Assembly (NCBI GenBank): GCA_053919585.1
Contig: CM132791.1
Length of the DNA: 64,000 bases
DNA from: Euprymna scolopes
Taxonomy: Eukaryota
Direction: 5' to 3' (one strand)
Shown here: one piece after another, positions 25,383-31,892 of the stretch
Layout of the letters: every line of letters starts with the position of its first letter
How positions within the stretch are numbered: the first letter of the stretch is position 1
Translations under genes and position numbers: made by a program
Notes under the pieces: generated by a model
Told to the model about the DNA's origin: nothing
The model's input: only the letters and a program-made list of their open reading frames with translations
The model's database searches: none

Positions 25383-25660
25383 GCAAGTAAATAGGGCGTT
25401 CCAAAATTTTGGGTACATTTTCGCATTGAATATCCCGACAACTAATAAAGATATAAAAACAGCTATATTAAGAAAACTCGCGTTCAAATTTTTCATTGGA
25501 ATATTTAAAGATGTTCAATATGAGCACTATTGGTCACTCGACATATATCAAACCGATAGTCATATAATTGCCAAATGCGTCAATCGTTTAAAAAGCCCGT
25601 TATTCTCTGTCTCTCATAAGTATATATAAGTTTATATGTTTATGCAAATAAGGGTTTATA

Positions 25661-27296
25661 CAGTGATGATCATATTTATTGGCACGGTAAAATAAAAGTG
25701 AAATTTTGTCTAATAAATTCTAAAAAAGGGATTAAATTAAAGAAAATAACGAAGTATATTATGTATTTTTAACTGGCCTTTCCGATGCAGCAATCGGATT
25801 TTAGAAAAAATAAATAACAAAGGAACAACAAACATAATTGCAAAAAACCCTTGTTCAAAATTATTGGCACGATTTATTTAATAATCAATTGTATAGCCTT
25901 TGGCCTTGATTACCTTCCTCAGTCGCTTTTCATAGTTTACAACCAAGTTGTTGCACTCTTCAGTAGTAATTTTAGCCCACTCTTCCTGACAATAATCCTC
26001 CAATTGAATAAGATTCTTAGGCTTCCTTTGCATTACCCTCAATTTTAATGTTCTCCATAAATTTTCAATTGGATTAAGGTCTGGGCTTTGTGATGGCCAC
26101 TCCAAAACATTAATATGATTGTCCTCAAGCCATTTCTTAGTCAGTTTAGCCGAATGCTTTGGGTCATTATCTTGCATGAACCACCAACGACGACCAAAGG
26201 AGAGTTCTTTAGCAGAGTCTTTCATGTTTTCATCCAATATTTTAACATAATCTTCCTTTTTCATGCTACCTGTGAACTTAACAAGTCGCCCTGGTCCAGA
26301 GGCAGCAAATGATCCCCAAAACATCAAAGTGCCTCCACCGTGCTTCACTGTGGGTATGGTGTTCTTAGGCAGGAAAGCTTCGCCAGATTTTCTGTAAATA
26401 TAAGACACTTTATTATGGCCAAATAACTCTATTTTCGTTTCGTCAGTCCATAGAACACGTTTCCAGAATGCAACATCTTTATCAATATGACGTTTTGCAA
26501 AGGCTAGCCTTGCTTTCAGGTGCATAGGCTTCAATAAGGGAGTCTTTCTCGGACGACATGCTTTTAAACCAGCTCTCTTCAAAACTCTACCAACTGTATG
26601 TCGAGATACATTCACTCCAGAGGTGCTCTGTTCATCAACAATCTCCCCAACAGAGATCCTTGGGTTTTGTTTTACTTGTCGAACAATTTTCCGTTCATCT
26701 CTTGGGGAAATAATCCTTTTTCTCCCTCTACCCTCTAAACTCATAACGTGACCTTGCGATTTGAACTTGTTTATTATGGCTCTAACAGTGGATTTGGGAA
26801 GGTTTAGCTTCTTTGAAATCTTATCATAGCCCTCCCCATTGGTATGGCATGCTACAACAAGCTTTCTGACGTCTTCGCTGTGTTCCTTAGTTTTAACCAT
26901 GGCGATTGAAAATTATAATTTAGTCACTTATAATAGTTTAAATAAATCGCTATCTAAAAATTATCTGAAAAAAATTATTCACTGAATTAGCGTTAAACAA
27001 GCATAATATGGCTATAAAAAAGTTCAGAAAGCACGTACACCGGAAATTGATTGATATTATACTGATACTAAAAGAAAAACAAAGCCGTGCCAATAATTTT
27101 GAACAAGGGTTTTTTGCAATTATGTTTGTTGTTCCTTTGTTATTTATTTTTTCTAAAATCCGATTGCTGCATAGGAAAGGCCAGTTAAAAATACATAATA
27201 TACTTCGTTATTTTCTTTAATTTAATCCCTTTTTTAGAATTTATTAGACAAAATTTAACTTTTATTTTACCGTGTCAATAAATATGATCATCACTG
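25661..27296 (-). mobile_element. Complete Tc1-family transposon with 211-bp IR/DR terminal inverted repeats and TA target duplication
   Basis: TA|CAGTGATGATC...GATCATCACTG|TA. TIRs at 25661-25871 and 27086-27296 differ at 3 positions by eye. Each TIR has an outer and an inner TTATTGGCACG-type direct repeat. Encloses an intact transposase ORF. Confidence 0.97.
25878..26900 (-). CDS. Tc1-like DD34E transposase, 340 aa, uninterrupted
   Basis: Paired-like HTH N-terminus, GRGRKR motif, WTDETK, TVKHGGG, MQDNDPKH and WPSQSPDLNPIENLW. Exactly 34 residues lie between the second D and the E. Confidence 0.97.
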   Translation of the reverse strand: MVKTKEHSEDVRKLVVACHTNGEGYDKISKKLNLPKSTVRAIINKFKSQGHVMSLEGRGRKRIISPRDERKIVRQVKQNPRISVGEIVDEQSTSGVNVSRHTVGRVLKRAGLKACRPRKTPLLKPMHLKARLAFAKRHIDKDVAFWKRVLWTDETKIELFGHNKVSYIYRKSGEAFLPKNTIPTVKHGGGTLMFWGSFAASGPGRLVKFTGSMKKEDYVKILDENMKDSAKELSFGRRWWFMQDNDPKHSAKLTKKWLEDNHINVLEWPSQSPDLNPIENLWRTLKLRVMQRKPKNLIQLEDYCQEEWAKITTEECNNLVVNYEKRLRKVIKAKGYTIDY

Positions 27297-27464
27297 TACG
27301 TAGGAAACGATTATTTTCTGATTTATAAGTCTTAAAACACTTATTAATCGACATACTTTATTGGTATACTCTACCACGTACAATCTATGTGAATAAATAC
27401 CGATCTGTATTAATTGTAGATACACAATTAGTGTCTGAATGATGATAATGCATATTATTTGGAT

Positions 27465-30504: not shown

Positions 30505-31537
30505 TTTTTTACAAAGGCATCACCACATTATCAAGGCCCAGAGGTCACTCAAGGATAAGGGTTAAAGAGTGTACAGTAGAAATTGGTCAATATAGTAATC
30601 ATTAGTAATAAAAATTTGGAAAATTTAATAACCTATATGGAACGGCCTATCAAGAACTTATTTACTTTAGACTTGAAGACAACCATATTGTAGTCAGCCG
30701 GAAAGCAGGAAAACGGAAGACAATTCCACAGGTGTGCAGTTCTAAGCAAGAAGCTTTGGTCATGGAATCTACGTTTAGGTTTAGGCACAGATAAAGAGTG
30801 GGGGAAATTATTGATAGTGTTTACAGCTAGACGAGTGTTTCTTGTGAAAGTTTGGCGAGGGGGGACCATAGATTGAAGCTCAGTTGAACACTTTCCATGA
30901 AAATAACGATACATCAGAGACAAACTCGCAACATCTCTTCTGTGAGATAGAGGTTGCAAGGAGGAGAAAAGGGCATCTCCTACGAGGCTACGAAGTCTAT
31001 TTTGAACTCTATCAAGGCAGGGCAAGTCCTTCCTAGCAGCTCCTGCCCAGATGTGGCAACAGTATTCCATCCTTGGACGTACCTGACTCTTATATAGATA
31101 GAGAATAGCATCAGCAGTGAGATATCTACTAGATCGATAGAAAGATCCCACCATTTATCCAGCGGCCTTGGCAACAGATTTGATATACGTGTTCCATTTA
31201 AGATCAGGAGTAATGGTCAAGCCCAGAAGCTTGTCAAAACTTGAGGCCTCCTGAAGACGAGAGCCATTCATTTCAATTGATGACAAATGTGGATTAGAAT
31301 GTTGATGATGTAAAGAGAGAAGCTTGGTTTTAGATGCATTAAAAGTAACCAGCCACTCCTTTTCCCATTGTACTACGTGCTCAAGATCAGAGGAGAGAGA
31401 ATTGGAGAGAACTTGGTCGTTTACTGTCTTAGATGTGGTACCATAAATGGTAGTGTCGTCAGCATAAATGTCTACAAATGATGTAAGGATATGATTTGGA
31501 AGATCATTAATGTAGATCAGGAAAAGAGTTGGGCCCA
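30505..31537 (-). mobile_element. CR1/L2-group LINE, best-preserved copy: 5'-truncated RT C-terminal half, 3'UTR and A-tail
   Basis: ORFs 31155-31577 (LGPTLFLIYINDLP...YADDTT...FNASKTK...LGLTITPDLKW) and 30633-31154 (LYLYKSQVRPRMEYCCHIWAG...RTAHLWN.LP) are in the same frame, separated by one stop codon. Confidence 0.95.
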
Positions 31538-31892
31538 GTATATACTTGTAAAGAGTCCCCTCCAAATACGTATCCATTTTTTTCTGTCAATAAGGATATT
31601 AGTTGCTGCTTCACTCATCCTCTTGTCTTCTCCAAGTGGTTAACCTCGATGGATAAGAAAGTTGTTTTGTATCTGTATTAATTTGAGTAGGATTGAAATT
31701 ACAAACCATGCTAAACTTTAACCGTAGAGACTCAACGTTTCTATCCATTACACCACGGGTCAATTACATAGTGAAACCACAACAACTAACTATGAAGATG
31801 AGGGCAAAAGTCCGCAAAAAATGATTACAAAAATAATGAAGCTTCTTCTCAAAAGATTTTAAAAAAATAATAATATAATAATACCCTTTAGA

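What the first reader, a model, noticed from the sequence alone, without database searches (positions are those of the whole stretch)
25661..27296. Intact Sleeping Beauty-like IR/DR Tc1 transposon: candidate active, possibly horizontally acquired
Seen: uninterrupted 340-aa DD34E ORF, 211-bp TIRs with about 3 mismatches, outer and inner transposase-binding-type direct repeats, and TA TSD. Every other coding element in the window is decayed, so this insertion is young. Known: IR/DR Tc1 elements (SB, Frog Prince, Minos, Passport) are used as gene-transfer tools and naturally intact copies are uncommon. Activity and horizontal transfer are inferences.
Basis: partly seen in the sequence, partly recalled or inferred. 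Interest (0 to 1): 0.7.

Follow-up and report, generated by a model that had tools for sequence, protein, structure and literature searches.

The report
Young complete Tc1 transposon copy, mollusc
This is a complete, young copy of a very abundant, transcribed "cut-and-paste" jumping gene of the Tc1 / Sleeping Beauty type in a mollusc genome. It is real and tidy but ordinary: this copy is slightly worn, and nothing shows that it came from another species.

Summary
Window 25661-27296 is a 1636-bp Tc1 element on the minus strand. It has a 340-aa open frame, a DD34E triad at D153/D244/E279 (Sleeping Beauty numbering), 211-bp inverted ends with 3 mismatches, two direct repeats per end, and TA on both sides.

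- **Abundance:** it is one copy of a very abundant family. Summed word depth is about 10^5 on the element against 10-25 on the flanks.
- **Expression:** the family's RNA is present in several runs, but no RNA read carries this copy's own letters.
- **Wear:** this copy carries 13 derived substitutions (0.8%).
  - Five change amino acids, and three of those residues are seen in none of 98 homologues.
  - A further change sits in its 5' outer direct repeat, in a core motif otherwise invariant in 23 of 24 repeats across six related elements.
- **Age:** the TIR mismatches are not shown to date the insertion. Only one is backed by reads as private to this copy, and the reads leave the other two open.
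- **Rarity:** intact copies of this kind are common in published surveys.
- **Horizontal transfer:** not supported. The nearest named relatives are fish elements at 57-58% protein identity, across a long branch. Relatives at 94% come from unnamed plankton metagenomes.

First-stage readers of this scan also flagged other apparently intact copies in this genome.

The parts
25659..25660 (.). TA target-site duplication, left copy
   Evidence: Sequence read directly. The inverted-repeat arms include it.
25661..25871 (-). 3' terminal inverted repeat, 211 bp (3' relative to the transposase gene)
   Evidence: 208 of 211 letters complementary to 27086-27296. Reads show 25700 and 25751 as letters private to this copy.
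25667..25687 (-). 3' outer direct repeat (putative transposase-binding site), core TTATTGGCACGG
   Evidence: D2, I2. The core is invariant across six related elements.
25852..25871 (-). 3' inner direct repeat
   Evidence: D2. The GTGCCA core is invariant in all six related elements; the longer motif is conserved in five of them.
25873..25878 (-). AATAAA polyadenylation-type signal overlapping the stop codon
   Evidence: Minus-strand sequence. Raw RNA depth falls about 20 nt downstream, at 25855-25856 (tables 2 and 6). Its function is inferred.
25878..26900 (-). Transposase ORF, 340 aa plus stop. PAI and RED helix-turn-helix domains, a GRGRKR motif, a KTPLL linker, and a DDE_3 catalytic domain with D153 (26442-26444), D244 (26169-26171) and E279 (26064-26066)
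   Evidence: The ATG lies in a gccATGg context.
26198..26329 (-). Cluster of 7 derived substitutions private to this copy's lineage (S191T, V209F, L226M, L235F and 3 synonymous changes)
   Evidence: Scan-statistic P = 0.002.
26901..27085 (-). 5' untranslated region between the inner direct repeat and the ATG; presumed site of the element's own promoter
   Evidence: Raw polyA RNA reads cover it, while the outer TIR has at least 10-fold less depth (table 2). A promoter is inferred, not shown.
27086..27296 (-). 5' terminal inverted repeat, 211 bp. Inner direct repeat at 27086-27105, outer direct repeat at 27270-27290
27275..27275 (-). G-to-A change (sense strand) in the core of the 5' outer direct repeat: TTATTGACACGG instead of TTATTGGCACGG
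   Evidence: The TGGCAC core is invariant in the other 23 of 24 direct repeats compared. The same letter lies on a DNA contig of run X6 that joins it to this flank with no differences (record 17).
27297..27298 (.). TA target-site duplication, right copy
   Evidence: Sequence read directly.

Best explanation
Window 25661-27296 is one young, structurally complete copy of a very high-copy, transcribed Tc1 family of the IR/DR (Sleeping Beauty-like) type in a mollusc genome.

Mechanism, inferred from the family:
- The 340-aa DD34E transposase binds through its paired-like PAI and RED domains to the four TTATTGGCACG-core direct repeats, two in each 211-bp inverted end.
- It synapses the ends, cuts the element out and reinserts it at a TA dinucleotide, which is duplicated.

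This copy is not the master sequence. It sits about 0.8% (13 derived substitutions) from the form that dominates the genome and the transcriptomes. It also has a substitution in the core of its 5' outer binding site and five amino-acid replacements. It is best read as a recent product of a recently active family. It may be weakened in mobility and in enzyme quality.

What is shown: the anatomy, family membership, abundance, family-level RNA, and conservation of the binding-site cores. What is inferred: transposition competence, the promoter and the polyA site.
For: **Anatomy:**

**Protein identity**
- Pfam HTH_SB 2.6e-18, HTH_Tnp_Tc3_2 1.9e-24, DDE_3 1.5e-17.
- SB100X catalytic domain 5cr4 at E 1.8e-86, colinear numbering, about 59% identity counted by eye from the match line.
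- H187, P247 and K248 are also in place.

**Abundance and derivatives**
- Summed word depth is 0.7-7 x 10^5 on the element against 0-25 on the flanks in two DNA runs, with 3707 and 1488 contig pieces laid.
- Joints from internally deleted copies are present.

**Family RNA**
- 400 raw polyA reads cover 25855-27118 at 15-50x, and the outer TIRs at no more than 4x.
- 1274-nt RNA contigs occur in other runs.

**This copy's divergence**
- 12-13 differences from the commonest form.
- All but one are polarised as derived in this copy, using the relatives at 94%.

**Binding sites:** phylogenetic footprint of both direct repeats across elements down to 68% protein identity.

**Selection:** purifying selection among intact relatives, dN/dS 0.23-0.41.
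Against: - No transposition, excision or DNA-binding assay exists.
- Copy number rests on summed contig word depth, which the tool itself says is not a copy number.
- No read from any run was shown to carry the whole copy. Word share was 0.77-0.81, about what the consensus alone would give.
- The RNA strand could not be settled. First mates lie on both strands, about 2.4:1 in favour of the minus strand, and the read starts suggest duplicate reads.
- The host organism and the organisms of the runs are coded, so 'mollusc' rests on an earlier agent's note and on run labels.
Confidence: 0.85

Rival explanations
1. This very copy is a fully autonomous, currently active element. Its own transposase is functional and its own ends are mobilisable.
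For: - The frame is open, and the catalytic triad and all recognisable motifs are intact.
- Three of the four direct repeats are canonical.
- Derived ORF changes are 5 synonymous to 5 non-synonymous, where 79% non-synonymous is expected. P = 0.04, which hints that part of them arose in a selected, active lineage.
- Some of its alleles appear at multi-copy depth in DNA contigs, for example depth 449 at 26225 and 923 at 26711 in X6. This hints at a small subfamily that has itself moved.
Against: - The 5' outer direct repeat has a G-to-A change at a position invariant in 23 of 24 repeats.
- T191, F209 and F235 occur in none of 98 homologues.
- At every private position all RNA reads carry the family letter, so no RNA from this copy was seen.
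- An open frame at 10 substitutions is expected by chance, P about 0.59.
Confidence: 0.3
2. The family entered this mollusc lineage recently by horizontal transfer from a distant taxon such as a fish.
For: - All the closest named relatives are fish Tc1 elements.
- Near-identical consensus sequence is held by runs under four organism codes and a 'mollusc metagenome'.
- Copies at 94% nucleotide identity with identical ORFs occur in many Tara Oceans plankton metagenomes.
- Horizontal transfer of DNA transposons is frequent in animals. One screen found 6043 events, more than 85% of them DNA transposons (PMC12400950).
Against: - Fish relatives are only 57-58% identical.
- The window's clade of ten rows has 100% support on a stem of 0.33 changes per site, apart from the fish rows.
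- That clade has its own depth, from 94% down to 68% identity, which suggests long residence in some group of hosts.
- Runs X1 and X6, under two of the organism codes, also match this locus's unique flanks at about 99-100%, so they are the same or sibling species.
- No relative was found on viral contigs.
- Named databases are heavily biased towards fish for this family.
Confidence: 0.15
3. It is a host gene derived from a transposase (a domesticated gene), and its open frame is kept by host selection.
For: The frame is open in a window where nothing else is. dN/dS is below 1 among relatives.
Against: - It has full TIRs, a TA duplication, very high copy depth, many different flanks and deleted derivatives.
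- Domesticated copies typically lose their ends and are single-copy.
Confidence: 0.02

Closest known systems
Sleeping Beauty (reconstructed salmonid Tc1-like element) and its natural SB / SB-like relatives
   Same: - 340-aa transposase with PAI and RED helix-turn-helix domains, a GR-rich motif and a PLL linker.
- DD34E at the same residue numbers (153/244/279), and H187/P247/K248 in place.
- An element of about 1.6 kb with TIRs of about 210-230 bp, each holding an outer and an inner direct repeat.
- TA target (PMC9777934 for the family's usual sizes).
   Different: - Only about 59% identical in the catalytic domain.
- 57-58% identical to the nearest named fish elements over the full length, on a separate long branch. 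The SB/ZB groups are reported as over 80% alike in CDS (PMC9777934).
- The direct-repeat core is TTATTGGCACG; no comparison with SB's own repeats was run here.
- The host is a mollusc.
- The ORF stops 6 nt before the 3' TIR rather than overlapping it.
ZB (zebrafish) and Passer: native, naturally active fish Tc1 elements used as tools
   Same: A natural element with an open frame, long TIRs and many young copies, which is the profile that led to ZB being tested and found active (PMC7913693 abstract).
   Different: Activity has not been tested here. This copy departs from its family's commonest form at 13 sites and in one binding-site core.
Unnamed relatives in marine metagenomes (P0001 cluster: Tara Oceans loci L001-L010, JGI locus L019)
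   Same: - The same element.
- 93.8% nucleotide identity over all 1636 bp.
- The same ORF offsets, TA flanks and direct repeats.
   Different: - A different host or population, which is unknown.
- Different insertion sites.
- 20 amino-acid differences.
- A canonical G in all four repeat cores.
Tc1-like elements with introns (TLEWI, DD36E) described in bivalves
   Same: Tc1-like transposases in molluscs (bioRxiv 10.1101/656579).
   Different: TLEWI elements are DD36E, low-copy, carry introns and mostly lack TIRs and TSDs. This element is DD34E, intron-less and high-copy, with full TIRs and a TSD.

Membership tests
Tc1 family (DD34E) of the IS630-Tc1-mariner superfamily | DDE catalytic domain with 34 residues between the second D and the E | tested here: met
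   D153, D244 and E279. DDE_3 at 1.5e-17. These three positions hold D, D and E in 98, 97 and 97 of 98 homologues.
Tc1 family (DD34E) of the IS630-Tc1-mariner superfamily | Bipartite paired-like N-terminal DNA-binding domain | tested here: met
   HTH_SB at residues 1-52 and HTH_Tnp_Tc3_2 at residues 70-140. Matches to the solved SB PAI and RED subdomains and to the Tc3 N-terminus.
Tc1 family (DD34E) of the IS630-Tc1-mariner superfamily | Terminal inverted repeats and a TA target-site duplication | tested here: met
   Relatives at other sites are also flanked by TA.
IR/DR subgroup (Sleeping Beauty, Frog Prince, Minos, Passport type) | Long TIRs of about 200-250 bp, each with two direct repeats, one at the tip and one at the inner edge | tested here: met
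   - The TIRs are 211 bp.
- The repeats lie at element positions 7-27 and 192-211 in both ends.
- Both repeat cores are conserved across six elements while the spacer between them diverges.
IR/DR subgroup (Sleeping Beauty, Frog Prince, Minos, Passport type) | The transposase binds the direct repeats, and all four sites are needed for efficient transposition | not testable with these tools
   Only conservation of the cores speaks for binding. One of this copy's four cores is mutated.
SB or ZB family in the narrow sense (PMC9777934) | High identity to SB or ZB transposases (groups reported as over 80% alike in CDS) | tested here: not met
   About 59% to the SB100X catalytic domain. 57-58% to the nearest named fish elements. 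A separate clade with 100% support. ZB itself was not compared.
Active (autonomous) transposon | Demonstrated excision and reintegration, or insertion polymorphism with identical copies at different sites | tested here: inconclusive
   - No empty-site joint was seen in two DNA runs.
- The right junction is probably present in X6, but only 25 nt of that contig lie inside the element, below the tool's 31-nt rule.
- Contigs cannot show absence.

The most novel reading that the evidence does not exclude
The family, rather than this copy, is a naturally active IR/DR Tc1 of molluscs that is still transposing and has spread recently between species. It has very high copy number, polyA RNA that starts inside the element, and the same consensus under four organism labels. 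Copies at 94% identity are widespread in ocean plankton. If so, its commonest form would be a native gene-transfer tool for molluscs, where such tools are scarce.
Probability: 0.25. Interest if true: 0.55.

Novelty: new member of a known kind. Interest (0 to 1): 0.3.

Why it matters
For biology at large it matters little. Young, intact Tc1 elements of this architecture are well documented, and this one behaves as expected.

It has modest practical interest. A native, abundant, transcribed IR/DR Tc1 lineage from a mollusc, about 59% identical to Sleeping Beauty in the catalytic domain, is a reasonable candidate to test as a transgenesis vector in molluscs. The six-element comparison defines its likely transposase-binding core, TTATTGGCACG.

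The useful correction for anyone following up is to test the commonest family form rather than this copy. This copy carries a binding-site change and three unprecedented amino-acid replacements.

Tried and rejected
1. **Exact-protein look-up of the window ORF:** not on record. Its 98%-identical neighbour P0121 is on record, but only on short RNA contigs without flanks.
2. **Orthologous insertion in a relative:** a BLAST extension of L002 20 nt into the window's flank looked like one. On alignment the flanks are unrelated.
3. **Host of the 94% relatives:** the long contigs L016-L018 hold no ORF besides the element and share no other repeat with the window.
4. **Viral vector:** no relative on viral contigs.
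5. **Run accessions in papers:** no hit.
6. **Contig ends as transcript ends:** the ends at 25842 and 27115 lie exactly 30 nt into the TIRs. That is the k = 31 assembly break, so they were rejected as evidence. Only raw-read depth was used.
7. **RNA strand:** it could not be decided from one run without a control gene.
8. **Earlier findings by sequence:** blank.
9. **TIR mismatches as an age clock:** not usable.
10. **Steps not taken:** The large profile search and structure prediction were not used, because family scans and solved-structure matches had already settled the protein's identity.

Full report
**1. What is there**

The stretch 25661-27296 (1636 bp) is a complete Tc1-type DNA transposon whose gene lies on the minus strand.
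- The frame 25878-26900 is open for 340 codons from an ATG in a gccATGg context.
- It is the only ORF of 180 aa or more in the 64-kb window.
- The two ends are 211-bp inverted repeats that differ at 3 positions.
- Each end carries a direct repeat at its tip and another at its inner edge (families D2 and I2).
- The element is flanked by TA on both sides.
- The 27-nt end motif occurs only at the two ends, with none expected by chance.

**2. The protein**

- Pfam finds the Sleeping Beauty PAI-type helix-turn-helix (residues 1-52), the Tc3-type second helix-turn-helix (70-140) and the DDE_3 catalytic domain (148-300).
- Against solved structures, the catalytic domain matches SB100X (5cr4) at E 1.8e-86 over residues 117-338, with colinear numbering. 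I counted about 59% identity by eye on the match line.
- The triad is D153, D244 and E279, that is DD34E.
- H187, P247 and K248 are present. These are the residues linked to SB target-site choice in the PMC8934666 abstract.
- A GRGRKR motif, a KTPLL linker and the HGGG strip are also present.

**3. The ends**

I aligned this element with five relatives from public assemblies whose transposases are 94% to 68% identical to it.
- Sequence conservation in the TIRs collapses to two blocks, the outer and the inner direct repeat, around the core TTATTGGCACG. The spacer between them diverges freely.
- That is the footprint expected of transposase-binding sites in an IR/DR element.
- The TGGCAC centre of the core is invariant in 23 of the 24 repeats compared. 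The single exception is this copy's 5' outer repeat, where window 27275 gives TTATTGACACGG.
- The change is not an assembly slip. A DNA contig of run X6 carries the same letter joined to this locus's right flank, with no difference over 329 nt (record 17).
- From established work on Sleeping Beauty (my own knowledge), both outer and inner repeats are needed for efficient transposition. This change could therefore reduce the copy's mobility. That is an inference.

**4. It is one copy of a very large family**

- In two DNA runs the summed word depth is 0.7-7 x 10^5 across the element, against 0-25 on the unique flanks. 3707 and 1488 contig pieces were laid.
- The tool warns that this is not a copy number, so I say only that the family is very abundant, probably thousands of copies.
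- An earlier agent's note on this genome speaks of thousands of copies of a Tc1 in 'a mollusc genome'. I did not check whether that is the same family.
- Many different flanks appear as loose ends at the element's tips, often (TA)n.
- Joints such as 25795>27174 show internally deleted derivatives. Deleted copies also occur in the metagenome contigs L017 and L018.
- First-stage readers flagged other apparently intact or near-intact copies elsewhere in this genome: s1-244972, s1-247440, s1-288705 and s1-288667. None of the notes shown carried a follow-up.

**5. How this copy relates to the family**

At 13 positions all, or nearly all, other reads and contigs differ from the window:
- 25700 and 25751
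- 26198, 26199, 26205, 26225, 26276, 26310 and 26329
- 26711, 26751 and 26865
- 27038

This is shown, table 3, and in the 1274-nt RNA contigs L011-L015.

Polarised with the relatives at 94%, the window letter is the derived one at all of these. At 26262 it is the other way round: the window keeps the ancestral M213 and the commonest form has I213. The copy is thus about 0.8% from its inferred progenitor.

In the ORF the ten derived changes split as follows:
- 5 synonymous.
- 5 non-synonymous: L64I, S191T, V209F, L226M and L235F.

How the evidence on these changes reads:
- With 79% non-synonymous expected, the split gives P = 0.04. That is a weak hint that part of them arose in a lineage still under selection.
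- Some of these alleles appear at multi-copy depth in DNA contigs, which fits a small subfamily.
- Against this, T191, F209 and F235 occur in none of 98 full-length homologues.
- Seven of the ten changes are crowded into 132 bp (26198-26329; scan P = 0.002). I cannot explain this crowding. Error-prone gap repair and conversion from an unsampled variant are both possible.
- An open frame after ten random substitutions is expected about 59% of the time. The intact ORF therefore needs no special explanation.

**6. Age and the TIR mismatches**

- Only the mismatch at 25700 is backed by reads as private to this copy.
- No read difference is listed for the mismatches at 25784/27173 and at 25682/27275.
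- The mismatch at 27275 lies 21 nt from the tip, where contigs break, so the reads cannot say whether it is private.
- The Tara relative L001 has the same letter on both arms at both of these positions.
- The family's two arms differ at TIR position 91, where this copy's arms agree.

The count of TIR mismatches is therefore not an age. The 0.8% private divergence is the better measure and still says 'young'. Converting it to years needs a mutation rate that I do not have.

**7. RNA**

- In raw polyA reads of run X23, depth is 15-50x from 25855 to 27118. It is 4x or less in the outer parts of both TIRs, and only one read fits both arms.
- Read-through from host genes would cover the TIRs too. 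The family therefore appears to be transcribed from within, starting near the 5' inner repeat and ending about 20 nt after an AATAAA at 25873-25878 that overlaps the stop codon.
- A promoter and a polyA site are inferred from this, not shown.
- Reads lie on both strands, about 2.4:1, with signs of duplicate reads. I could not decide which strand dominates.
- Frame-shifted variants are among the RNA: a 2-nt loss at 26425 in 8 of 55 reads, and a G inserted behind 26768 in 4 of 35.
- At every private position all RNA reads carry the family letter. The expression evidence belongs to the family, not to this copy.

**8. Relatives and the horizontal-transfer idea**

- The word-index protein search gave 6487 hits at E of 1e-20 or better.
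- The best is P0001 at 94%, followed by unnamed proteins at 83, 81, 77, 75, 69 and 68%. After those come named fish Tc1 proteins, with full-length ones at 57-58%.
- P0001 is encoded, with an identical ORF, on contigs from many Tara Oceans plankton metagenomes. Its whole element is 93.8% identical to the window's. A JGI metagenome holds another full copy.
- In a quick maximum-likelihood tree of 82 proteins, the window groups with nine unnamed proteins at 100% SH-aLRT on a stem of 0.33. This group stands apart from the rows that include the named fish sequences (midpoint root, for drawing only).
- dN/dS among intact members is 0.23-0.41, as expected for lineages that persisted by transposing.
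- Nothing here shows recent transfer from a distant taxon. The named neighbours are too distant, and the near neighbours have unknown hosts.
- The two DNA runs under different organism codes also match this locus's unique flanks almost perfectly, so they are the same or sibling species.
- No relative lies on viral contigs.
- Horizontal transfer remains possible, as for any Tc1, but it is untested. I could not name the hosts.

**9. Comparison with what is known**

- The element meets every testable defining feature of the Tc1 DD34E family and of its IR/DR subgroup.
- It does not meet the identity level of the SB or ZB families in the narrow sense.
- A published survey found 350 intact SB/ZB-type elements, mostly 1.5-1.7 kb, with transposases of about 340 aa and TIRs of 180-300 bp. 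It reports intact copies in 105, 183, 26 and 36 genomes for its four groups, with SB or ZB detected in single mollusc species (PMC9777934).
- Intact natural copies are thus not rare.
- The mollusc Tc1-like elements with introns (DD36E, mostly without TIRs) are a different thing.

**10. Verdict**

- The finding is real, cleanly delimited and ordinary. It is a new member, in a distinct lineage, of a well-known kind.
- The family was probably active recently and may still be.
- This copy is a slightly worn member, with one suspect binding site and three unusual residues.
- Horizontal acquisition is unsupported.
- Interest 0.3.

Noticed in passing
window:33997-34113 (-): A full-length 5S ribosomal RNA match (64 bits against a gathering score of 38; model positions 1-120), lying alone in repeat-rich, gene-poor sequence.
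   Followed up: no
window:30633-31577 (-): Two adjoining ORFs. The upstream one (31155-31577) matches part of a reverse-transcriptase domain (RVT_1, 1.5e-09). This is a decayed retroelement.
   Followed up: partly
window:58120-58620 (-): An old, unrelated Tc1/mariner-like remnant, 30% identical to the transposase over 168 aa (tblastn E 8e-19).
   Followed up: no
window:25209-25455: Just left of the element there is a 104-bp unit repeated about twice, built around (AC)n and (TA)n microsatellites. Many other copies of the family abut (TA)n at the same end (loose ends at 25657 in three runs), as expected for a TA-targeting element.
   Followed up: partly
window:26198-26329: Seven of this copy's ten derived ORF substitutions are crowded into 132 bp (scan P = 0.002). 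There is no single mutation type and no donor among the relatives, so the crowding is unexplained.
   Followed up: partly
L017:9925-10869 and L018:4928-5877: Two contigs of one long-read assembly carry the same kind of internally deleted derivative, with the first 54-74 nt of the 5' end joined to the last roughly 880 nt. This suggests a non-autonomous subfamily in the host of the relatives at 94%.
   Followed up: no
window:26262 (codon 213): The commonest form of the family in this genome and in the transcriptomes has I213. The window copy, the plankton relatives and 96 of 98 homologues have M213. The dominant form therefore carries a rare residue of its own.
   Followed up: partly
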